Assembly (NCBI GenBank): GCA_964252035.1 | Contig: OZ176209.1 | DNA: 64,000 bases | Direction: 5' to 3' (one strand) | DNA from: Podarcis erhardii | Taxonomy: Eukaryota | Notes under the pieces: generated by a model | Databases searched by the model: none | Told to the model about the DNA's origin: nothing | What the model saw: the letters and a program-made list of their open reading frames with translations, nothing else | Translations under genes and position numbers: made by a program | Shown here: piece after piece, positions 15,878-59,634 of the stretch | Position numbering within the stretch: position 1 is the stretch's first letter | How the letters are laid out: each line of letters starts with the position of its first letter

Positions 15878-16372
15878 TTGTTGTTGTTGTTTAGTCAATT
15901 AGTCGTGTCCAACTCTTCATGACCCCATGGACCAGAGGATGCCAGGCACTCCTGTCTTCCACTACCTCTCTGAGTTTCATCAAATTCATGTTGGTCGCTT
16001 CTATAACACTGTCCAACCATCTCATCCTCTATTGTCCCTTTTCCTTGTGCCTTCAATCTTACCCAACATCAGAGCTTTTTTTCATAGAGTCATCTCTTCT
16101 CATGAAGTGGCCAAAGTATTTGAGCCTCAGTTTCAGAATCTGTCCTTCCAATGAGCACTCAGGGCTGTTTTCCTTCAGAATGGATAGGTTTCATCTTCTT
16201 GCAGTCCATGGGACTCTCAAGAGTCTCCTCCAGCACCATAATTCAAAAGCATCAATTCTCCAGCGATCAGCCTTCTTTGTGGTCCAGCTCTCACTTCCAT
16301 ACATCTCTACTGAGAAAACCATAGCTTTAACTCTACGGATTTTTGTCGACAAGGTAATGTCTCTGCTTTTTT
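15878..16372 (-). mobile_element. RTE-BovB LINE, 5'-truncated 3' end
   Basis: Minus strand gives KSRDITLSTK..VKAMVF..MYGSESWT.KKAD..RIDAFELWCWRRLLRVPWTARR, the BovB C-terminus, followed by a (CAA)n tail. Confidence 0.9.
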
Positions 16373-17822
16373 TTTTTTTTTTTTAGCTGCCTACATTTCT
16401 AATGATGCTGCAAATGAAGAATCAGAATTGGCCTCCTCTTACCCTGTTTGTCCCCAGAGGGATTGCAGTAGGGAGAGGGGTGGTGAATCCCCAGCATGCA
16501 TGTGAAATGGAACACACAGCTCTATGCCCTGTGTGTGATTTCCAAGTCACAACCAAATTCTGCAGCTTCCATTTTCCTCAATTTCTACAATGCCACCTAT
16601 CCTTGATTGTTTCCAGGCCCAGCTCACACCTAAAAATGTTTTATGGCCTTGGGACCATGAGCAACTGGATTTGTTGCTGGTAGCACTTGCTGAACGACTA
16701 TCATCTACAAGAATCTCTATATTGATTCCCTCCCGCCGCCCATCTGGGAAAGAGAGAAAACATTAGACATAAGGCCAATACCCTGCAGTTAAATTGCACT
16801 TGACATTACTGGCAGCCTGACTGGGCTTTTAGTTAATAGTGGCATCCAGAGTACATTGTGTACTAAGAAGATACATATATGACATCTTTTATTTGTGGTA
16901 TTCTGTATTCTCCTTTGCTTTCCAGCTACACGGTGCTGGAGCAAACAACACTTATCAAAGCATTTTATTCCATAGCTACTTTGAAAAGAATGTTGTGCAA
17001 AGTGGGAGGGAGGTTCAGGGGCTCGGGGTTACATTTCTAACAAAGAGAGGCAAGCAAAAAAGATGCACAAAAGCTGTACTATCAGGTTCCTGCCCTTGGC
17101 CGTGTAATGCCGTGACCATCAATACAGCTTTTTGGGATGCTGCAGACCAAAGGGCTACATTTCACAAGCAACACAATCTGGGCAGCACATGCAGAATGAC
17201 TTCCGACTGGAGAGGAGATTGGAGATTCTCCCCCAAACCCACATGGGGCTTGCCTCTTGAGTTGCTTCCTCATTCTTGTAAGACACATGTGTCATTCTCA
17301 AGGTTTACCTCAACCTCCAGGAAAAGATTTGCAGGGAGCTGCAGAGGGAAGCGGGAGGCAGGAAAACCCTGTTCTATGAATGAGAACTGTGCTCCATTCA
17401 CAGAAGGAAAGTTAGGATCCAAGTCATACAACACTGGCATGTCTGGAAGAAGTAACCCTTCTTGTGGATCACAGGGCCAGGAAGAAGTTGTTTTGGGAAA
17501 CAGCAAACAGTTGGTGCCTGTCATAGTTGAACATGGTTGCTATTCCACAAATCAGGAGCAGCTACACTGAAAACCCTTCTACAATTGCTCTATTTTAGGA
17601 GACTTCAAAGAGAGACTCTCTTACAAAACACATCAAGCTATTGGGTATGTAAGGAATCTGGTTGTAAGCGGCATAGGGTCTTATACGTTACTACCAAAAC
17701 CTTGAACTTTGCCCAGTAGTAGATTGGCAGCCTGTATAGATCCCAGATCCCAAATGATGCACATAGAGACCTATAAGCTCAGCTAACTAGCCAGGCTAGA
17801 GGCCTTGTGTCTATTGTTTCTT

Positions 17823-18221
17823 TGTAGTGCCTTATCTTGTGCTAGGAGCAGCTTTAGTTCCAAGGTTGTAAACAACATTCCTAAGTGTCTACATTTGACA
17901 ATGAGACATGCTGTGCTCAAATGTGCTAAACCCCTCAGGTAGAAAGGAATGCAAAGAGACCACATGCAGCGGGGGCTGCTTAGAGAGAGAGCCCTTTGTT
18001 TCCTTGCCTAATGAATATGTAATGAAGGAAAGGACATACATGGTATAATTAGTATTGTGTTGTAACTTTAGATTGGAGGAAGTTTATGCATATGTATTGC
18101 TTGGCTTGCTCAGCTTTTGGAGACTGATCCCACTGAGCCTTTATTGATAGCAATAAACACCCTTTGTTTTCTCACCACTGCGTGGAGATTTCCTTCAGCC
18201 TCAAAAGTTAATTTTGCTACA
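17823..18221 (+). mobile_element. Possible solo LTR
   Basis: TGTAG...CTACA inverted ends and AATAAA near 18151, but no TSD was found. Confidence 0.35.
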
Positions 18222-18391
18222 CAAAGACATCCTAGAAGCCACATTTTGTGCTAGCTGCAGCCTCCAAACCCACCTCAATGTTAATCCCAAGAAGAACACA
18301 TTGCAGAAATGCAATCTTGAGGCTACTGGCGCCTGGACTATGGTGATCAAATCATCCTTATCCAGGAATAGTCAGTAAACTTATTTAGCCA

Positions 18392-19467
18392 AAACTCTGT
18401 CATATGCGCTCCTCCGATTCTTTTTTTCGGATGGAGCTTTGCATGTCCCCTCGGCCCTAAAGGTGTTCAAGGCAAAAGTGGTTGCCGCGCTTGCTTATGC
18501 TGCCCCGCTTTGGGCTGTGATGACAGATCTTGCTCCTCTTGAGACACTGCAAAATCAATTCCTGCGTCGGCTCCTAATGCTCCCCCTGTGCGTAAGCAAC
18601 GCAGCCATGCGACTAGAACTGAAGATCGCATCCTTAGAAACTTGCCTGTGGAAGCAAGTCTTCAATTATTGGTTATCATTGTGGCATAGATTACCAAACC
18701 ACTACCTTGTCCAATGCTTATGGCAAGATGAATTCTCTAGCCTTTGGTCTAGTAGAATTCATGCCAAACTCCTGAGTTATGGAATCTCTCCTTCAGATTC
18801 CCTAAAACTAGACCATATTACTGCTCAAAGACTGATCCGCCAAAGACTGGATGACATCGATCTACAGCGAAATTATATGCTGGGGGGAGGTGTTTGTTCG
18901 CCCCAGAACATTGGTATCACTTTAACTTACTGCGTTCCATCATACCTCTCCTCCCTTTCGACTGTTGCCCATAGACTGGCCTTCACCAAAGCGAGGTTTA
19001 ACGTTTTTCCCTCCAACGTCCTGAGACATAGATTCTCAAAGGGCCAAGCCCCCGCCACGTGCGAATGTGATAAGGAGACGCCGGAGTCGCTCCAGCACAT
19101 CATGTTCACTTGCCCCCTGTTCAATGTGCCACGGGCAAATTTGTTGGGATCAATCATACAGAAACTAGAGGGTACCCCACCAAAATTCCACCTTGCCCAA
19201 ATCTTGCAGGATAAGGATACTCATACGACCCTGAATGTGGCAAGGTTCCTGGTCGCTGTCCTTACCCAAAAGCGACGCCAAGGAGCACTACAAGCTAACT
19301 AAGGCGTAGTATGCCATTCTATTTTATAGTATTTTATTGTTATTGTGGTGTTTTAGCGGCTGTTTTTTTTTTTTTTCCCCACGTGCACAAGCTGTTATTT
19401 ATGTGTTGTTTTTACCTGTATGGGCCTATGGCCGTAATAAATATTGTTTGTTTGTTTGTTTGTTTTG
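18392..19467 (+). mobile_element. Young 5'-truncated non-LTR retrotransposon (RTE-X-like; clade uncertain)
   Basis: Open frame from the 5' junction to TAA at 19302, with post-RT region LKVFKAKV..YAAPLW and C-terminal AFTKARFNVFPS..CEC..ESLQHIMFTCPLF. AATAAA plus (TGTT)n tail; 10-bp TSD TATTTAGCCA (18382-18391 and 19468-19477). Confidence 0.75.
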
Positions 19468-52066: not shown

Positions 52067-53798
52067 CTTTAAGTGCTGGCTGAAAATGCCCTTTTCGTCT
52101 TACCATGAAGAAAGCACCAACCAATTCATCATTTGCATTATAGATGTGAAGTGGTGTCCTGTGTTAACAGGTTTCTCACAATGAGATAATGCAGTATCAT
52201 TAGGCGGACTCCTTGCAAATTGCAATGATTGCTAATCATGCTGGTTAAAATGGTCTGACACAAGACCACAGGACTATTAACCCAGAATGTGAGTGGCAAA
52301 GTGCAGCAAAACCTATCCTTTCATAGGTAGGGCAGTCTATAATACTATACATCACAGTTTGATTTGTGCATGATTAAGACTAAGTCATTTCATTCATTAG
52401 CAACCTAATCACTGGCCTGACTAACAAGAATATGCATAAAGAGATTTGTTTTCTTGCAAGCTGCCAATTTCATAGGGTTATAATCAAGACTGAATGCCAA
52501 TAAACAACACACAATACATAGATGGTGCTTGTTTTTATATATTTGTGTTGTTTTTATATCGTATTTTTATTTTAATAGAGCAGGTGGCAGACAAAGTTGA
52601 AGCTTGCAATAACTTAAGGGCTGTCACAATATTCATGCAATTTAGTTTAAAGTAAATCCTTTCTGTGTTTACTTAGGTGTAAGTGCTACTGGATCTAGAA
52701 TTTGCATTTTGTGAATGGAAGGCCATCCAGGGAAGGCTTTCGATTCAGCAGGGGGGGATCCCACATTGAAAAAGTATAGAAGGCTATGCCAGGGGCTGAA
52801 AGGGAAGGAGGGGAATTGGAGTCCAATTCCAATTTGCTCCAGAGGGCAGCTGATGCCAGGAATCCAGTGTGCAACCCCACCCCCATTGTTCATAGACATA
52901 ATACAATTTAGCCTGTAGAATGTTATCTTTGGACTGACTCAATGCCCATTCCGGATTCGTATTTAAAATATTGATTGAGCTATGGATACTTAGCATAAGC
53001 TTTAACAAGCAATTTTGCTTTGGATCTGTGATATGTTCCTTGGGGATCCTGAGGAAAGCTGTAGTAATGATTCTGAATATTTCTTATAACTATTTTAAAA
53101 TACGCTGCATTTAAGAATAAAACCACAATGTCAGGTCTGCTATTCAGATAACACACCTGCTAGCAGAGGTTTGTTGCTGTTGTTAAAGCGATAAGCCTCT
53201 GCAAGAGGTGATGAACTTCCTAAGTGGTTCCAAGCCAGAAAGAGTTAACCTGATTTGCTTCTGATCCCTATCAGGACAAACATAATTTGCTTGTATTCCA
53301 AGGTGTAATCCTTAGTATAATACAGTTAGAAGCACATAATGCTAAAAGCTAACAAGCCCAAATTCATAAATGTGGTTTATACCCAAACTGTCCTAAAAGA
53401 GCAATATCTTCCTCCAAATTAATACACTCTGTTTTAGACCCAAACTATATGCATACCTTCTAACTGAAACTATTAAGGCAGATCAGTAGGTTTTTACATT
53501 ATAATTCATTGTGCTATAAAGCACAGGCACTAATGAAAATAATTGTGAAATGACTTTTAAATAGTCCCCCCCCCCATATTTTGCAGTGAAAGAAAAGACT
53601 AGATAGGACACATAAGACAACTGCTGTAGCAACTGTCCTGCCTCCCTCTCATTTGGTATAACTTTATTGGGAGAATTGCACCAACTTAAGACTTCTATGA
53701 ATATTTCTTTTTTTGTTATTGTTCTGTGCAGTTTCTATATACTAGCAACAATAAATACTGTCACTGATATAAATCCCAAATAGTCATCCCTACATAGC

Positions 53799-54191
53799 TG
53801 TCAGGGAACTGCCATCGGAGAGAGAGGTGGTGGATAAGTTCCAGGAGAATAGGAGAGAATCTGCAGCAGAAGGAACCAGCAGGGGGAGTGCAGGAGTCAC
53901 AGCGGAGGGGAGGCTCTGGGATACTTCCAGTGACGACAGCGAAGAGGTAACAAGACCCCCGTTAGGAACTCCCACCCTGCGCCGGAAACTGTCACGCAGA
54001 GAGTCACGAAAGCGCATGTCTGTCAAACAGCTTTTATGTTGGCGTAGGTTCCGTAGACGCCCACTGTCAGATTCTACCAGCGACTAACGGAGTCATGCTT
54101 TGGGGAGCTCCGTTAGTGCCTAGGTTGGGATGACCAACCAAACCCCAGAGGGATCAAGCTTTACGCACAAGCAGCTCATTATCCCATCACA
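53799..54191 (+). repeat. 5' LTR
   Basis: TGTCAGGG...CATCACA, identical by eye to 58892-59284. Confidence 0.97.
54032..54073 (+). promoter_or_regulatory. Predicted LTR TATA-like box (TTTTAT 54032-54037) and transcription start (about A54063)
   Basis: The TSS is inferred from the 11-nt match to the PBS; the TATA-like element lies 26-31 nt upstream. Confidence 0.6.
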
Positions 54192-54193
54192 GC

Positions 54194-54204
54194 AATCTGA
54201 CAGT
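54194..54204 (+). other. Self-priming primer-binding site
   Basis: AATCTGACAGT, 2 nt after the LTR end, is the exact complement of ACTGTCAGATT (54063-54073). There is no TGG tRNA-type PBS. Confidence 0.85.
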
Positions 54205-54237
54205 CTCTGAAAGCAGCTTGTGCAAGCAGAGGGCATC

Positions 54238-55260
54238 ATGAGCGAACCAGCTGGAACCGGAGGTGCAGGAGCTGGGGCTGGAGGAGGTCCAAGCCTGGAA
54301 GACAGGTACAGGGCGTTGGAGGTCCAGCTCGCGCTGCAAACGGCGAGGCTCGAGGAGAGGAGGGCTCAAGATGCGGATAAAGGGAAACCCACCCCACTTG
54401 CCAGAAAGGTGCCTGGATTGGTGCAGAAATTTGGGGGGGATCCCAGGAACTATCAAGCCTTTAGGACAGAGATGCAATATGCTCTTAACCTACTGTTTGA
54501 TGACTTCCCTGATGAGAACTCTAGAGTGGCGTACGTGATCGGCCATCTAGAGGGAGGGGCGAGGGACTGGGTGCGGCCCCTGATGGCAGCCAATAATGAA
54601 ATCTTAAAGGACACTATGAAGTTTTTTCGCGCCATGGACTTGATGTTTTCCAGTGAGATTGAGCAAGGGGTGGTGCGGAGGCAGTTAATGGCGTGTAAAC
54701 AGGGGAGCCGATCTGTACGTGAGTACTGGACTGAGTTCAGCATGCTGATTCATAGACTGGGGTGGGACCTTGCGAGTGAACCTATTCAAATGCTGTTTGA
54801 AGAAGGGCTCTCTCCGGCAGTGAAAGATGAACTTTCCCGGGCGCCCAGGGCGGAGTCTATGGATCATCTGACTAAATCAGCGCTGTCCATAGGAGCGCGC
54901 CAGGAGGCAAGGGCTTTGGAAAAGCGGGAAGGAAAAGGGGAACGTTGGAAGGATTTCCGCATTCCAGAGATTCCGGAGCAGCCTTTCCCGCCAGCAGAGC
55001 CGATGGAAATTGGAACAGCGCGCGCGCGCGCAGTTTCAAACACCAGTGAAGGGCGGAAGAAGGAGGGGAAGGGCGCCAAGAGATGTTATCTCTGCCAACA
55101 GCCAGGTCACTTTGCCAGAGTCTGTCCGCAAAGGAAGGAATGGCAAGGAATGGCGGGAACTGTTGGGGGGAAGGAGGAAGGAGAAACAAGCAGCGAGCAA
55201 GTAAAAGCCAACGCCTGGCTGCCAGCATCAGGGCACCGCAGTCAGGCAGAGGAGAAGTGA
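54238..55260 (+). CDS. gag: Gag (PEG10/sushi-like capsid plus CCHC zinc knuckle), 340 aa from ATG 54238
   Basis: KFGGDPRNYQAF..VAYVIGHLEGGARDW capsid motifs and CYLCQQPGHFARVC knuckle; no stop codons or frameshifts. Confidence 0.93.
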   Translation: MSEPAGTGGAGAGAGGGPSLEDRYRALEVQLALQTARLEERRAQDADKGKPTPLARKVPGLVQKFGGDPRNYQAFRTEMQYALNLLFDDFPDENSRVAYVIGHLEGGARDWVRPLMAANNEILKDTMKFFRAMDLMFSSEIEQGVVRRQLMACKQGSRSVREYWTEFSMLIHRLGWDLASEPIQMLFEEGLSPAVKDELSRAPRAESMDHLTKSALSIGARQEARALEKREGKGERWKDFRIPEIPEQPFPPAEPMEIGTARARAVSNTSEGRKKEGKGAKRCYLCQQPGHFARVCPQRKEWQGMAGTVGGKEEGETSSEQVKANAWLPASGHRSQAEEK

Positions 55261-58200
55261 ATGTGCCCACGCCGGAACCTCCAAGACCAGCGCTTGTGAT
55301 AGAGGTGTTGCTGGAACTGTCCAATGGACACCCACTAAAGATAAAAGCGCTATTGGATTCAGGCAGCTCCTGTAATTTCATGAGTAAGGAGTTTGCAGCT
55401 GAACACCAGATACAGACTATCCCATTAAGTAAGCCTTTGCAGGTTACCACGATTGATGGGAGGGAACTGTTGGGAGGAGAAGTGAGCCAGCAGACTGTTC
55501 CAATGGTAATGAGGGTGGCAAGACACACAGAACTGATAGCGTTTAACGTAGCCACTTTGGGAGGAGCTCCCATTATTTTGGGAATGAGCTGGCTAGCACT
55601 ACACGATCCTCTAGTAGGCTGGCATCAGAGAGTGGTTTCCTTTGGATCAGCACATTGCCTAGAACACTGCAAAGAGGGAGAGGTTCAGGCAGGGGCCAGG
55701 GCCACTCTAGCAGGGGTGGAAGTGATGGGCAAGGGCAAGGTGCCACCACAATATGCTGACTTGATTGACGTCTTTAGCGAAAAGGAAGCAGATAGACTGC
55801 CCCCGCACAGACCCTTTGACTGTCAAATTAACTTACTCCCAGGAGCACAATTGCCAGTGGGCAAGCTGTATGCAATGTCAGACAGTGAAATGCAGGAGTT
55901 AAGGGAGTTCATTGACAAGAATCTCAAGCGAGGTTTCATCAGAGAGTCACGAGCGGTGGGGGGCAGCCCAGTGTTCTTTGTGGACAAAAAACACACGGGC
56001 AAACCGAGGCTTGTATGTGACTTCAGAAGCCTAAATGCAGTGTCAGAACCAGTGACTTTCCCTATGCCTAGAATTGATGACATTCTGACACAGGTGAGAA
56101 AAGGGAAAATTTTTACCAAGCTGGACCTTAGGGGGGCATATAACTTGATACGTGTGAGAAAGGGGGATGAGTGGAAGACCACTATGTTCACCCCCTTGGG
56201 GGCTTTTGAGTATTTAGTTATGCCTTTCGGATTACAAGCGGGCTCCGCCTGCTTTCAATCATTCATGAATCACGTCCTGGGGCCACTGCTCTACAAGAAC
56301 TGCGTAGCGTTCTTAGATGACGTCCTGGTGTACTCAGCGAATGAGGAGCAGCATGTGCGAGATGTAAGAGAGGTACTGAGCAAGTTGCGAGAAAATCGGC
56401 TGTGGGTGAAACTGGAGAAGTGTCAGTTTCATACCAGGGAGGTGGAATTCCTGGGGTACCGGTTGTCTGACAAGGGGTTGGCCATGGATCCCAGCAAGGT
56501 TCAAGCGGTACTGGAATGGAAAACACCAAAGACCAAGAAGGACGTGCAAAGGTTCCTGGGCTTCGGAAACTTCTATAGGAAGTTCATCAAGAACTTTGCC
56601 CATTTGACAGCGCCTATCACGGATTGTCTTAGTAGCAAAAAGAAATTTGTTTGGACGGAAGAAGCGCAGCGGGCGTTCGAACGCTTAAAGCAGGCGTTTG
56701 CGTCAGAAGAGCAACTGTTGCATGTGGATCTACAACAACCAATGAGAGTGGAGACTGACGCGTCAGACCGAGCGGTGGGGGCCGTTCTTCTCCAGCCGGG
56801 AAAAGATACGTCTGAATGGAGACCGTGTGCATTCTTCTCGCGGAAGTTGAACAAATCCGAGAGGAACTACACAGTATACGACCGAGAACTGCTCGCCATT
56901 CATGAAGCCTTCCGGAAATGGCGGCACTTGCTGATTGGGGCGCAGCACAAGGTTCAAGTCCGAACTGACCACAAAAATCTGGAATATTGGAGAACAGCCC
57001 GAGTGCTGAACCAGAGACAAGTACGATGGGCCCAGGAGTTCTCCAAATTCCACTTTGAGATTCGTTACGTGCCCGGATCCGAGAACGTGAGGGCGGACGC
57101 TCTTTCCAGGAAACCTGAGTACTTAGAGGGGGAGGGAGCGCCCGAGGCAAGGCATGTAATCCCTGAAGACCGCTGGGTGTGTGGGGCGGCATTGGTGGGG
57201 CAGAGGGAACTGATAGAGGGTACTGAGAACGATGAATACGCCCAAGGGAAACTCAGAGAGCTCCGGAGGGCAGAGGAGAACACAGGGGGGTTTGAAGAAA
57301 AGAACGGGGCGTTGTATTACAAAGGGGCACTGTACATACCCGACGGGGAACTGAGGGGCAGAGTACTCAAGCAGTTGCATGACAGCCCCACCGCGGGACA
57401 TTTTGGACAGCACAAAACCATGTGGTTGGTTACCAGGGAGTTTTGGTGGCCCAAGGTGAGGGAGGACGTACGGGAATATGTCAGGGGTTGCGTCAGGTGC
57501 CAGCGAGCAAAAGGAGAGAGGGTGGCGCCAGCGGGGCTATTACAACCCTTACCCACGCCCGAAAGGCCATGGGAGGCAGTATCCATAGATTTTATGACGG
57601 ACCTGCCAAAATCCAAAGGCAAAACAGCTGTCATGGTGGTGGTAGATCTATTAACCAAGATGTGTCATTTTATAGCTTGTTCACATGCAGTCACAGCGGA
57701 GGAAACCGCCAAGTTGTTTGTAGAACATATTTTTAGGTTGCATGGCGCCCCCTTGAGGGTTTTGAGCGACAGAGGGAAACAATTTACTTCCAGGTTCTGG
57801 AGGAAACTGATGAGCTTATTACACGTAGAACTCAATTTCTCAACTGCTCGGCACCCAGAAACCAATGGGCAAGCGGAAAGGGCAAATGGGATTTTACAAC
57901 AATACCTGAGGTGTTATGTAAAAGACAGAGAAAATGATTGGGTGGATAAGTTACCTCTAGCAGAATTTGCCTACAACAACGCGGAGAACGTGTCCACAGG
58001 GATGAGTCCCTTTCTGGCAAATTATGGGTGTCACCCCCGGGCATTCCCAGGAGAGGGAGGGGAGAGGTGGAGCGTGCCGGCGGCGGAATATTTTTTTGAA
58101 GAGATGGAAGCGATCCACCGTCAGCTTCAACTTAACTTAGAGAAAGCCAAGGAAGAATATAAGAAGCAAGCAGACAAAAATAGGAGGGAAGGTGAAACCA

Positions 58201-59180
58201 TAAGGGTGGGGGACCGGGTGTGGTTATCCACCCAAGGACTACCGTTCAAAGGAGGGTGTAAGAAATTGAGACCCAAAAGATTGGGACCCTTTGAGGTCAT
58301 ACAGCAGGTCAACCCAGTAGCATTCAAACTCAGGCTGCCCAGTCACATGAAGTTACACCCAGTATTTCACAGGTCATTACTGTCGCCGTACCGAGAGGGA
58401 CGTGAGTGGGGGGAGCATGAGAGAGAGGCCACCCAAACGCCCGTGATAGAAGAGAGAGAGCGCGACATGAACGTGGCAGGAATCATTGATTCCAGGTGGA
58501 AGGGGAATCAGGTGGAATATCTGGTAGAATGGGAGGGGGAAGTAGAGTCGGAAAACACTTGGGTACCAGCAGAGGTAGTCAATGACGAGGTTTTAATAGA
58601 AACATTTCATCAGCGTTTCCCAAGAAAACCGCAACCCGTGGCACGATTTAGAAGGGAACACTTTGGTACCACCGATGAGGAAGGAGAGTTTGAAGGGTTC
58701 CCTGAGTCAGGGGTGGGTGAGGAAGCCGACTCAGACGAAGAAGAGGAAGACGGGGAGAGAGACGGTACGCCGTGGCTAGAAGTGTTTGAATCCTCGGACG
58801 ACGAGGAGAGTTCCTTCAGGGGCTTTCCGTCCTCACCGCCAGTGGGAGAGGAGGCGGGAGGGGGTGAAGGGGGCCCTGGGGGGGAGGTGGATGTCAGGGA
58901 ACTGCCATCGGAGAGAGAGGTGGTGGATAAGTTCCAGGAGAATAGGAGAGAATCTGCAGCAGAAGGAACCAGCAGGGGGAGTGCAGGAGTCACAGCGGAG
59001 GGGAGGCTCTGGGATACTTCCAGTGACGACAGCGAAGAGGTAACAAGACCCCCGTTAGGAACTCCCACCCTGCGCCGGAAACTGTCACGCAGAGAGTCAC
59101 GAAAGCGCATGTCTGTCAAACAGCTTTTATGTTGGCGTAGGTTCCGTAGACGCCCACTGTCAGATTCTACCAGCGACTAA
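55083..59180 (+). CDS. pol: Pol polyprotein: protease, RT, RNase H, integrase, chromodomain, acidic tail extending into the 3' LTR (probably expressed as Gag-Pol; listed start is the ORF-track start, not a true initiation site)
   Basis: LLDSGSS (PR); LDLRGAYNLIRV and FLDD (RT); TDASDRAVGAVL (RH); HHCC, D-D-E and GPF (IN); EYLVEWEG..NTW (chromodomain). Uninterrupted 1365-codon frame. Confidence 0.95.
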   Translation: MLSLPTARSLCQSLSAKEGMARNGGNCWGEGGRRNKQRASKSQRLAASIRAPQSGRGEVNVPTPEPPRPALVIEVLLELSNGHPLKIKALLDSGSSCNFMSKEFAAEHQIQTIPLSKPLQVTTIDGRELLGGEVSQQTVPMVMRVARHTELIAFNVATLGGAPIILGMSWLALHDPLVGWHQRVVSFGSAHCLEHCKEGEVQAGARATLAGVEVMGKGKVPPQYADLIDVFSEKEADRLPPHRPFDCQINLLPGAQLPVGKLYAMSDSEMQELREFIDKNLKRGFIRESRAVGGSPVFFVDKKHTGKPRLVCDFRSLNAVSEPVTFPMPRIDDILTQVRKGKIFTKLDLRGAYNLIRVRKGDEWKTTMFTPLGAFEYLVMPFGLQAGSACFQSFMNHVLGPLLYKNCVAFLDDVLVYSANEEQHVRDVREVLSKLRENRLWVKLEKCQFHTREVEFLGYRLSDKGLAMDPSKVQAVLEWKTPKTKKDVQRFLGFGNFYRKFIKNFAHLTAPITDCLSSKKKFVWTEEAQRAFERLKQAFASEEQLLHVDLQQPMRVETDASDRAVGAVLLQPGKDTSEWRPCAFFSRKLNKSERNYTVYDRELLAIHEAFRKWRHLLIGAQHKVQVRTDHKNLEYWRTARVLNQRQVRWAQEFSKFHFEIRYVPGSENVRADALSRKPEYLEGEGAPEARHVIPEDRWVCGAALVGQRELIEGTENDEYAQGKLRELRRAEENTGGFEEKNGALYYKGALYIPDGELRGRVLKQLHDSPTAGHFGQHKTMWLVTREFWWPKVREDVREYVRGCVRCQRAKGERVAPAGLLQPLPTPERPWEAVSIDFMTDLPKSKGKTAVMVVVDLLTKMCHFIACSHAVTAEETAKLFVEHIFRLHGAPLRVLSDRGKQFTSRFWRKLMSLLHVELNFSTARHPETNGQAERANGILQQYLRCYVKDRENDWVDKLPLAEFAYNNAENVSTGMSPFLANYGCHPRAFPGEGGERWSVPAAEYFFEEMEAIHRQLQLNLEKAKEEYKKQADKNRREGETIRVGDRVWLSTQGLPFKGGCKKLRPKRLGPFEVIQQVNPVAFKLRLPSHMKLHPVFHRSLLSPYREGREWGEHEREATQTPVIEERERDMNVAGIIDSRWKGNQVEYLVEWEGEVESENTWVPAEVVNDEVLIETFHQRFPRKPQPVARFRREHFGTTDEEGEFEGFPESGVGEEADSDEEEEDGERDGTPWLEVFESSDDEESSFRGFPSSPPVGEEAGGGEGGPGGEVDVRELPSEREVVDKFQENRRESAAEGTSRGSAGVTAEGRLWDTSSDDSEEVTRPPLGTPTLRRKLSRRESRKRMSVKQLLCWRRFRRRPLSDSTSD
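55200..55268 (+). promoter_or_regulatory. Predicted -1 ribosomal frameshift signal (slip site, 6-nt spacer, H-type pseudoknot)
   Basis: Pol is in the -1 frame relative to gag. S1 55213-55222/55238-55247 (10 bp with one G-U pair); S2 GGGCAC 55231-55236 / GTGCCC 55263-55268. Confidence 0.75.
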
Positions 59181-59284
59181 CGGAGTCATGCTTTGGGGAG
59201 CTCCGTTAGTGCCTAGGTTGGGATGACCAACCAAACCCCAGAGGGATCAAGCTTTACGCACAAGCAGCTCATTATCCCATCACA
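58892..59284 (+). repeat. 3' LTR (U3 is fully protein-coding in the Pol frame)
   Basis: Follows the polypurine tract GGGGGGGGAGGTGGA; identical by eye to the 5' LTR. Confidence 0.97.
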
Positions 59285-59634
59285 ATAGCCTACTTGGGGG
59301 CGGGGTTCTTGGTACTTTTATCACCTTCGTAAAGTTTTTTTTGGGGGGGGGTGAGAATTCTCTAAGGCAGCCCTGAACTGTGTCATTCTCTCCCCACAGA
59401 GATGTGTCTGGCACCTTAATAGTGTAGCTTTTGTCATATGCTTAAGGCTTAAGCCACATCTCTTTCCCCTGACATTTCATACCTGAAACATGTTTTTAGA
59501 ACCCACTCCATTCTTTTGATTTAAAATTGTTTTGACTGATTTTAATGTTGCATTTCTACACGGCTGCAATTCTCTCTGGGACTTTACAGTGAAGGTCGAT
59601 AAGATATCTAACAAATAATCACCATCATATTAAT

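What the first reader, a model, noticed from the sequence alone, without database searches (positions are those of the whole stretch)
58644..58826. Gypsy integrase tail carries two tandem LEDGF-IBD/TND-binding-like motifs: candidate host-mimicry targeting system
Seen in sequence: after the chromodomain, Pol continues into a disordered acidic tail with RFRREHFGTTDEEGEFEGF (58644-58700) and WLEVFESSDDEESSFRGF (58773-58826). Both have a helix-forming segment ending in F, an acidic Ser/Thr linker with CK2-type sites, then FxGF. Established knowledge (recalled): this is the architecture of IBD-binding / TND-interacting motifs in CDCA7L/JPO2 (about IFNAPSDDEEFVGF, also present as a tandem pair), IWS1, POGZ and MLL1. 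Those motifs dock on LEDGF/p75, HDGFL2 and other TFIIS-N-terminal-domain elongation factors, and CK2 phosphorylation strengthens binding. Inference: this retrotransposon may tether its intasome to H3K36me-marked, actively elongated gene bodies by mimicking host ligands. That would converge with lentiviral use of LEDGF but through a linear motif. I know of no description of this in a Gypsy element. This copy does sit inside a gene, but one insertion proves little.
Basis: partly seen in the sequence, partly recalled or inferred. Interest (0 to 1): 0.88.

Follow-up and report, generated by a model that had tools for sequence, protein, structure and literature searches.

The report
LEDGF-ligand-like motifs in Gypsy integrase tail
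A young, intact lizard Gypsy retrotransposon carries two conserved short motifs in the floppy tail of its integrase that look like the host peptides that dock onto the chromatin reader LEDGF, which suggests, without proof, a new way for such elements to choose insertion sites.

Summary
Both peptides lie at the stated coordinates, in the Pol reading frame, after the chromodomain of an intact Ty3/gypsy element (53799-59284). Its two LTRs are identical and it has a 5-bp target duplication.

- **Architecture:** each motif has a hydrophobic anchor ending in F, an acidic Ser/Thr linker of 8 or 9 residues, then FxGF. This is the published architecture of TND-interacting motifs that bind LEDGF/HRP2.
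- **Conservation:** the anchors are invariant or nearly so in relatives down to 43% identity. The spacer between the motifs drifts. Synonymous codon changes at the invariant F/G/F positions point to selection on the protein.
- **Context:** AlphaFold2 predicts a disordered tail with a short helix just before the first motif.
- **Chromodomain:** every family that carries the motif has a degenerate aromatic cage or no chromodomain. 242 relatives with a canonical cage lack the motif.
- **Second lineage:** a separate Anolis Gypsy family has a motif whose only PDB hit is the JPO2 M1 peptide fused to the LEDGF IBD (6EMO; 12 of 20 identical; E 0.51, not significant on its own).

Binding, phosphorylation and insertion preference were not tested, and no TND sequence was available for complex prediction. 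I found no prior description in the paper library. First readers flagged the same motif on two other pieces of this genome.

The parts
53794..53798 (+). Target-site duplication ATAGC, left copy; the right copy is at 59285-59289
   Evidence: The flanks of both LTRs were read directly.
53799..54191 (+). 5' LTR, 393 bp, TG...CA, 100% identical to the 3' LTR
54194..54204 (+). Primer-binding-site position: 11 nt fully complementary to 54063-54073 inside the LTR (Tf1-like self-priming layout)
   Evidence: Inverted repeat I1.
54220..55260 (+). gag ORF (Retrotrans_gag / Ty3 capsid, CCHC knuckle); pol overlaps it in the -1 frame
55083..59180 (+). pol ORF, 1365 aa, domain order PR-RT-RNaseH-IN-chromodomain-tail
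58209..58394 (+). Integrase C-terminal SH3-like domain (SH3_Tf2-1), residues 1043-1104
   Evidence: Pfam E 4e-19; folded in the AlphaFold2 model.
58473..58616 (+). Chromodomain, residues 1131-1178, with a non-canonical cage (M/W/E where relatives have [FYW]-W-[FYW])
   Evidence: Pfam E 8e-9; cage columns compared across about 270 relatives.
58638..58700 (+). Motif 1: predicted helix at residues 1186-1193, anchor F1194, 8-residue linker GTTDEEGE, then FEGF (1203-1206)
58701..58772 (+). Variable acidic spacer between the two motifs
   Evidence: Mean pairwise identity 0.33, against 0.54-0.59 for the motifs.
58773..58826 (+). Motif 2: W1231/V1234/F1235 anchor, 9-residue linker ESSDDEESS, then FRGF (1245-1248)
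   Evidence: W, F, F, G and F are invariant in 6 sequences down to 43% identity, with synonymous codon differences at these positions.
58878..58891 (+). Polypurine-tract-like run directly upstream of the 3' LTR; it also codes the conserved GGEVD
   Evidence: Sequence read. The assignment as a polypurine tract is inferred from position.
58892..59284 (+). 3' LTR. Its first 289 nt code the last 96 residues of Pol, including a conserved basic segment and a predicted helix at residues 1345-1354

Best explanation
The two motifs are functional short linear motifs in the disordered C-terminal tail of the integrase of a recently active lacertid Gypsy element. They most likely imitate host TND-interacting motifs of the LEDGF/HRP2 class (IBD-binding motifs such as those of JPO2/CDCA7L). 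Proposed mechanism: each motif docks its aromatic anchor and its FxGF into the two hydrophobic pockets of the LEDGF/HRP2 TND (the IBD), and the acidic linker lies on the basic patch. The linker may be strengthened by CK2 phosphorylation at TTDEE and SSDDEE. Two motifs per integrase, and several integrases per intasome, would give avidity. Because LEDGF/HRP2 read H3K36me2/3 through their PWWP domains, the intasome would be tethered to transcribed gene bodies. This would replace methyl-lysine reading by the chromodomain, whose aromatic cage is lost in this lineage. Shown here: presence, architecture, disorder, conservation under protein-level selection, cage loss, and an independent JPO2-like motif in an Anolis family. 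Inferred: TND binding, phosphorylation and targeting.
For: - **Architecture:** it fits the published TIM definition of an obligate helix with an F/V/L/I anchor, an acidic linker of 8-16 residues with Ser/Thr, and FxGF, which is essential for LEDGF/HRP2 partners (PMC9987994). The linkers here are 8 and 9 residues. JPO2 M1 in 6EMO has the same F-8-FxGF spacing.
- **Conservation:** in motif 2, W1231, F1235, F1245, G1247 and F1248 are invariant in 6 sequences down to 43% identity. In motif 1, F1189, F1194, G1205 and F1206 are kept in 10 of 11 sequences, including a sister family (P0009-P0012) about 0.7 substitutions per site away. Spacer identity is 0.33, against 0.54-0.59 for the motifs.
- **Protein-level selection:** the invariant F/G/F codons differ synonymously in loci L001 and L002.
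- **Disorder:** AlphaFold2 folds the SH3 domain and the chromodomain. The tail from residue 1194 on has pLDDT below 50, and a helix is predicted at 1186-1193, immediately before the motif 1 anchor.
- **Cage loss:** all motif carriers have a degenerate cage or no chromodomain, while 242 relatives with a canonical cage lack the motif.
- **Independent lineage:** the Anolis family P0061/P0078 is sister to a canonical-cage element (SH-aLRT 96). One clade holding all carriers is rejected by the AU test (p 0.025). Its motif KRLRDIFAEPSDEDSFEGFT has JPO2 M1 fused to the LEDGF IBD (6emo_A) as its only hit among 177,635 PDB sequences.
- **Specificity:** the composite pattern is found only in these tails, 18 hits against 0.3 expected.
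Against: No binding evidence of any kind was obtained, and no complex prediction could be run. The window's own motifs, and profiles built from them, do not retrieve IBM chains from the PDB. The 6EMO hit has E 0.51, and the Anolis motif was picked with a pattern that already required an acidic stretch followed by xGF. In the Podarcis muralis relatives the first F of motif 1 is L or M, and one relative (P0125) has lost motif 1. No helix is predicted for motif 2. Insertion preference is unknown. Whether the tail remains on mature integrase after protease processing is also unknown.
Confidence: 0.55

Rival explanations
1. The motifs are functional host-binding linear motifs, but their partner is not LEDGF/HRP2. 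It could be another TND protein (IWS1, TFIIS, Elongin A, MED26, PPP1R10) or a different reader of acidic-aromatic peptides, such as histone H2A-H2B or a TFIIH p62-type PH domain.
For: Conservation, disorder and the acidic-aromatic character fit any such partner. TIMs as a class bind several TNDs (PMC9987994). The L/M at the first FxGF position of motif 1 in relatives weakens a strict LEDGF-type reading for that motif.
Against: The invariant G and second F, and the fixed 8-9 residue spacing from the anchor F, are specific to the FxGF class. The review says this class is required by LEDGF/HRP2 and optional elsewhere. The Anolis motif resembles a LEDGF ligand in particular.
Confidence: 0.25
2. 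The conserved residues serve the element itself rather than a host tether. Possible roles are contact with its own degenerate chromodomain, SH3 domain or basic C-terminus (auto-regulation or intasome assembly), a protease processing site, or nuclear import.
For: The motifs lie between a folded chromodomain and a conserved basic C-terminal segment, so an acidic-basic intramolecular contact is conceivable. Nothing here excludes it.
Against: This does not explain why a family with no chromodomain (the Anolis family) evolved a near-copy of a host LEDGF ligand. It also does not explain why the motif appears only where the cage is lost.
Confidence: 0.13
3. There is no function. The motifs would be chance products of a low-complexity acidic tail, or conservation would be imposed by an overlapping nucleic-acid signal near the polypurine tract.
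For: The tail is compositionally biased (E 23%, G 18%) and lies close to the polypurine tract. The far C-terminus is indeed constrained at RNA level, because it overlaps the self-primer.
Against: Shuffles give 0.4% for two F.GF. The anchors stay invariant through synonymous codon changes while neighbouring residues drift. The pattern is absent from 247,214 residues outside these tails.
Confidence: 0.05

Closest known systems
JPO2/CDCA7L IBD-binding motifs M1 and M2 (host LEDGF/HRP2 ligands; PDB 6EMO)
   Same: Both are a tandem pair of motifs in a disordered region, each with a hydrophobic anchor ending in F, an acidic Ser/Thr linker, and FxGF. Motif 1 here has the same F-8-FxGF spacing as JPO2 M1. 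The Anolis Gypsy motif shares 12 of 20 residues with it.
   Different: Here the carrier is a retrotransposon integrase, not a host transcription factor. Binding is unproven, and there is no detectable homology beyond the motif.
Lentiviral integrase-LEDGF/p75 tethering
   Same: The proposed outcome is the same: an integrase tethered through the LEDGF IBD to H3K36me-marked transcribed genes (PMC9987994; PMC3185499).
   Different: HIV-1 integrase binds through a structured interface on its catalytic core dimer (recalled knowledge; PMC10854676 contrasts the prearranged site with the unstructured IBM). Here it would be a disordered linear motif in the C-terminal tail.
PogZ, a domesticated pogo transposase that binds the LEDGF IBD
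   Same: A transposase-derived protein that uses the LEDGF IBD (Bartholomeeusen 2009, cited in PMC3185499).
   Different: PogZ is a domesticated host gene of DNA-transposon origin. The present case is an apparently active LTR retrotransposon.
Integrase-tail linear motifs of other retroelements: MLV integrase tail-BET ET domain, deltaretroviral integrase-PP2A B56, Ty1 integrase targeting domain-AC40, Ty5 integrase-Sir4
   Same: In each, a short peptide in or near the integrase C-terminus copies a host ligand and sets the target choice. Sources: bioRxiv 10.1101/2020.06.19.161513 and PMC7459421, both listed; the MLV and Ty5 cases are from recalled knowledge.
   Different: The host partner and the motif class differ. 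None of these uses a TND or IBD.
Chromoviruses with a canonical chromodomain
   Same: The domain order is the same, with the chromodomain fused to the integrase C-terminus.
   Different: Canonical members keep the three aromatic cage residues (242 of the relatives examined) and have short tails. This lineage has M/W/E at those positions and a 187-aa tail with the motifs.

Membership tests
TND-interacting motif (TIM) of the LEDGF/HRP2 class (IBD-binding motif) | Lies in an intrinsically disordered region | tested here: met
   AlphaFold2 pLDDT is below 50 from residue 1194 to about 1340, while the neighbouring SH3 domain and chromodomain are confidently folded.
TND-interacting motif (TIM) of the LEDGF/HRP2 class (IBD-binding motif) | Short helix with a conserved F/V/L/I anchor upstream of the linker | tested here: inconclusive
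   Motif 1 has a predicted helix at 1186-1193 followed by the nearly invariant F1194. Motif 2 has invariant W1231 and F1235, but no helix is predicted for the free chain.
TND-interacting motif (TIM) of the LEDGF/HRP2 class (IBD-binding motif) | Acidic flexible linker of 8-16 residues with Ser/Thr (CK2-type sites) | tested here: met
   The linkers are GTTDEEGE (8 residues) and ESSDDEESS (9 residues). The S/T-x-x-D/E pattern is present at TTDEE and SSDDEE. The acidic/Ser/Thr character is kept in relatives while residue identity drifts.
TND-interacting motif (TIM) of the LEDGF/HRP2 class (IBD-binding motif) | FxGF | tested here: met
   FEGF and FRGF are present in the window. G and the last F are invariant. 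The first F of motif 1 is L or M in three Podarcis muralis relatives.
TND-interacting motif (TIM) of the LEDGF/HRP2 class (IBD-binding motif) | Physical binding to a TND/IBD, lost on F-to-A change and enhanced by CK2 phosphorylation | not testable with these tools
   No TND sequence could be obtained from a tool result. Biochemistry is required.
Chromovirus (Ty3/gypsy with chromodomain integrase) | PR-RT-RNaseH-IN order with a chromodomain at the integrase C-terminus | tested here: met
   Pfam hits to RVP_2, RVT_1, RT_RNaseH, Integrase_H2C2, rve, SH3_Tf2-1 and Chromo, in that order. The element falls in a strongly supported clade (SH-aLRT 100) whose named members all come from squamates, within vertebrate chromoviruses.
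Chromovirus (Ty3/gypsy with chromodomain integrase) | Canonical three-residue aromatic cage for methyl-lysine | tested here: not met
   The cage columns read M/W/E here, and S, N, Y or H followed by W and E in close relatives. Nearly all other relatives have [FYW]-W-[FYW].

The most novel reading that the evidence does not exclude
Squamate Gypsy elements have replaced chromodomain-based chromatin reading with host-mimicking LEDGF/HRP2-binding linear motifs at least twice independently. One replacement happened in the lacertid lineage, in the internal tail, as a tandem pair. The other happened in an Anolis lineage that lost the chromodomain and carries a near-copy of the CDCA7L/JPO2 M1 motif. 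This would be the first LTR-retrotransposon use of the LEDGF pathway and a convergence with lentiviruses through a different interface.
Probability: 0.45. Interest if true: 0.88.

Novelty: new variant of a known kind. Interest (0 to 1): 0.78.

Why it matters
Tethering of an integrase to a host chromatin factor decides where retroelements land. LEDGF-dependent targeting has so far been a hallmark of lentiviruses (recalled knowledge). A disordered, host-copying LEDGF/HRP2 motif in a currently active-looking lizard Gypsy element would have several consequences:
- It would show that the same host hub has been captured by a completely different molecular route.
- It would give a natural example of switching from a chromodomain to a linear-motif tether.
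- It would extend the catalogue of TND ligands to mobile elements.
- It would predict a gene-body insertion bias that can be tested directly in lacertid and Anolis genomes.

Tried and rejected
- **PDB searches with the window's motifs:** sequence searches with the whole tail, with motif 2 alone, and with two profiles of the retrotransposon motifs gave nothing or only non-significant unrelated hits such as ACE2.
- **Numb peptide:** one of those hits was a Numb peptide that shares SFRGFP, from a PDB entry that I recall (not checked here) to be a 14-3-3 complex. I rejected it as a chance match, because the 14-3-3 motif as I recall it needs a basic residue upstream and this context is acidic.
- **ESM Atlas:** a feature search of the tail returned no usable hit.
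- **Identical copies:** an exact-protein look-up of the window Pol and of Anolis P0078 found no contigs, so insertion contexts of other copies could not be collected.
- **Anolis relatives:** a homologue search on the Anolis tail found no further relatives carrying it.
- **Flanking gene:** Pfam on ten flanking ORFs gave no hits, so the claim of an intragenic position could not be checked.
- **Read laying:** contigs of four runs showed only that the family is high-copy in several organisms. It gave little per-site information.
- **Complex prediction:** Complex prediction was not used.

Full report
**Observation.** The window holds a complete Ty3/gypsy element at 53799-59284.
- Its 393-bp LTRs (53799-54191 and 58892-59284) are 100% identical, begin with TG and end with CA, and are flanked by the 5-bp duplication ATAGC.
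- gag (54220-55260) is followed in the -1 frame by a 1365-aa pol ORF (55083-59180).
- Pfam finds protease, RT, RNase H, integrase zinc finger, integrase core, SH3_Tf2-1 (residues 1043-1104) and a chromodomain (residues 1131-1178).
Residues 1188-1206 are coded by 58644-58700 and residues 1231-1248 by 58773-58826.
- They lie in the internal region between the chromodomain and the polypurine tract. The last 96 residues of Pol are coded by the 3' LTR.

**More than chance.**
- Shuffling the 91-aa internal tail gives two F.GF in 0.4% of trials.
- I defined a stricter composite pattern: F, then 8-9 residues with at least five D/E/S/T, then [FLM]xGF.
Every hit is in the tail after the integrase or chromodomain. 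Shuffles give 0.3 hits.
- The hits are not independent, because they come from three families.

**Relatives and conservation.**
- The closest proteins are Podarcis muralis gene models (P0001-P0003; 66-73% identical to the query over its C-terminal 326 residues).
- The exhaustive representative search added P0124 (64%), P0143 (58%) and P0125 (48%) from unnamed assemblies.
- In the alignment, motif 2 keeps W1231, F1235, F1245, G1247 and F1248 in all six sequences that have a tail. The linker keeps only its acidic/Ser/Thr character.
- Motif 1 keeps F1189, F1194, G1205 and F1206 in 10 of 11 sequences. These include the sister family P0009-P0012, whose linker is TPTLSAST. Position 1203 is F, L or M. 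P0125 has lost motif 1.
- Mean pairwise identity is 0.54 for motif 1 and 0.59 for motif 2. It is 0.33 for the spacer between them and 0.38 for the SH3-chromodomain linker.
- In loci L001 and L002 the invariant F, G and F are coded by different synonymous codons than in the window. The constraint therefore acts on the protein, not on an overlapping nucleic-acid signal.

**Structural context.** An AlphaFold2 model built on this alignment folds the SH3 domain and the chromodomain. It leaves residues 1194 to about 1340 disordered (pLDDT below 50). It predicts a short helix at 1186-1193, immediately before the motif 1 anchor F1194.

**Comparison with the known motif class.**
- The review of the TFIIS N-terminal domain defines TIMs by three features: an obligate helix with an F/V/L/I anchor, an acidic linker of 8-16 residues rich in Ser/Thr that CK2 phosphorylates, and an FxGF. 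The FxGF is optional in general but present and essential in all known LEDGF and HRP2 partners. Several partners carry two or three motifs in series (PMC9987994).
- The window's motifs have linkers of 8 and 9 residues and S/T-x-x-D/E sites at TTDEE and SSDDEE.
- The spacing F-8-FxGF is the same as in JPO2 M1, as printed in the 6EMO alignment.

1. *Chromodomain cage.* I read the three aromatic-cage columns of the chromodomain in about 270 relatives.
   - 242 have [FYW]-W-[FYW] and no tail motif.
   - Every tail-motif carrier has a degenerate cage (the window has M/W/E; P0009-P0012 have N/K/F or N/R/T) or no chromodomain at all.
2. *A second lineage.* An Anolis carolinensis family (P0061 and P0078, clusters of 46 and 75 member sequences) lacks a chromodomain and carries KRLRDIFAEPSDEDSFEGFT in its tail.
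   - Searched against all 177,635 distinct PDB sequences, this 23-residue stretch has a single hit: the JPO2 M1 peptide fused to the LEDGF IBD, 6emo_A. It aligns to KEVADIFNAPSDDEEFVGFR with 12 of 20 identical residues.
   - E is 0.51, so the hit is not significant on its own. The Anolis motif was also found with a pattern that already required an acidic stretch followed by xGF.
   - The extra matches (K, DIF, PSD) lie outside that pattern.

**Phylogeny.** On an RT-to-SH3 tree (IQ-TREE quick search, tail columns excluded):
- The window family and P0009-P0012 are sisters (SH-aLRT 100).
- The Anolis family is sister to P0020, which has a canonical cage (SH-aLRT 96).
- All of these fall in a clade with SH-aLRT support of 100. 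Its named members are all from squamates (Podarcis, Anolis and Crotalus); one member, P0018, is of unknown origin.
- Holding all carriers in one clade costs 34.7 log-likelihood units (AU p 0.025). The motif was therefore gained at least twice, or gained once and lost repeatedly.
- In the Anolis family the motif lies downstream of a G-D-S-V-M segment. By analogy with the window's G-E-V-D-V at the polypurine tract/LTR junction, this segment probably marks the LTR start. The two motifs would then sit in non-homologous positions. This last point is inference, because no Anolis DNA could be fetched.

**Interpretation.** My best reading (confidence 0.55) is that these are host-mimicking TIMs of the LEDGF/HRP2 class that tether the intasome to H3K36me-marked transcribed chromatin. 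This function would have been taken over from a chromodomain that no longer has a methyl-lysine cage.
- Shown: presence, architecture, disorder, protein-level conservation of the anchors, cage loss, and recurrence in a second lineage with a JPO2-like sequence.
- Inferred: binding, CK2 regulation, avidity from two motifs per integrase, and the targeting outcome.
- Rivals: a different host partner for the same peptides (0.25), an element-internal role (0.13), and no function (0.05).

**Novelty.**
- Full-text searches found no paper that links TIMs or IBMs, LEDGF or the TND with LTR retrotransposons or chromoviruses.
- The general principle, a peptide in an integrase tail that copies a host ligand, is known. 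Examples are deltaretroviral integrase with PP2A-B56 and Ty1 integrase with AC40, and MLV integrase with BET and Ty5 integrase with Sir4 (recalled knowledge).
- LEDGF use is known for lentiviruses through a structured interface. The transposase-derived host protein PogZ also binds the IBD.
- I therefore rate this as a new variant of a known kind.
- First readers noted the same motif on two other pieces of this genome. Those are unchecked notes, not independent evidence.

**Limits.**
- No TND or IBD sequence was available from any tool, so no complex was predicted.
- Insertion preference could not be examined, and the claim that this copy is intragenic could not be verified.
- The host is inferred to be a lacertid lizard only from the Podarcis relatives. 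Run and organism names were coded.

Noticed in passing
window 54063-54073 and 54194-54204: An 11-nt stretch inside the LTR (ACTGTCAGATT) is perfectly complementary to the sequence that starts 2 nt after the 5' LTR, at the primer-binding-site position. This is the Tf1-like self-priming layout that another first-reader note flagged.
   Followed up: partly
window 59156-59166 (3' LTR copy of the self-primer): The same 11 nt code the Pol C-terminal residues P-L-S-D-S. The strong conservation of the last residues of Pol (LSDSTSD in the relatives) may therefore reflect an RNA-level constraint rather than protein function.
   Followed up: partly
window 58892-59180: The pol ORF runs 289 nt into the 3' LTR. 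This LTR-coded part includes a basic segment with a predicted helix (residues 1345-1354) whose LLCW[KR]R core is kept even in the 43%-identical relative P0125. It could be a nuclear localisation signal or a nucleosome or DNA contact.
   Followed up: no
proteins P0021 and P0022 (Anolis carolinensis; clusters of 366 and 94 members): An abundant Anolis family with a canonical cage has a partial look-alike in its tail: hydrophobic DIVM, the acidic linker PDEEEN, then LGF. It lacks the first aromatic of FxGF.
   Followed up: no
window 58200-59284 in runs X2, X12, X17 and X18: Contigs from four differently coded organisms cover this stretch at k-mer depths in the thousands. Ten coded organisms hold its 31-mers. 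The family is therefore high-copy and shared among related species.
   Followed up: partly
window 15919-19302: Three ORFs of 155-287 aa on the + strand have no Pfam match. Their nature is unknown.
   Followed up: partly
protein P0004 (Podarcis muralis): An NCBI gene model named vomeronasal type-2 receptor 26-like contains an integrase/SH3 fragment of this family (77% identity over 83 residues). This suggests an insertion that was annotated into a gene model.
   Followed up: no
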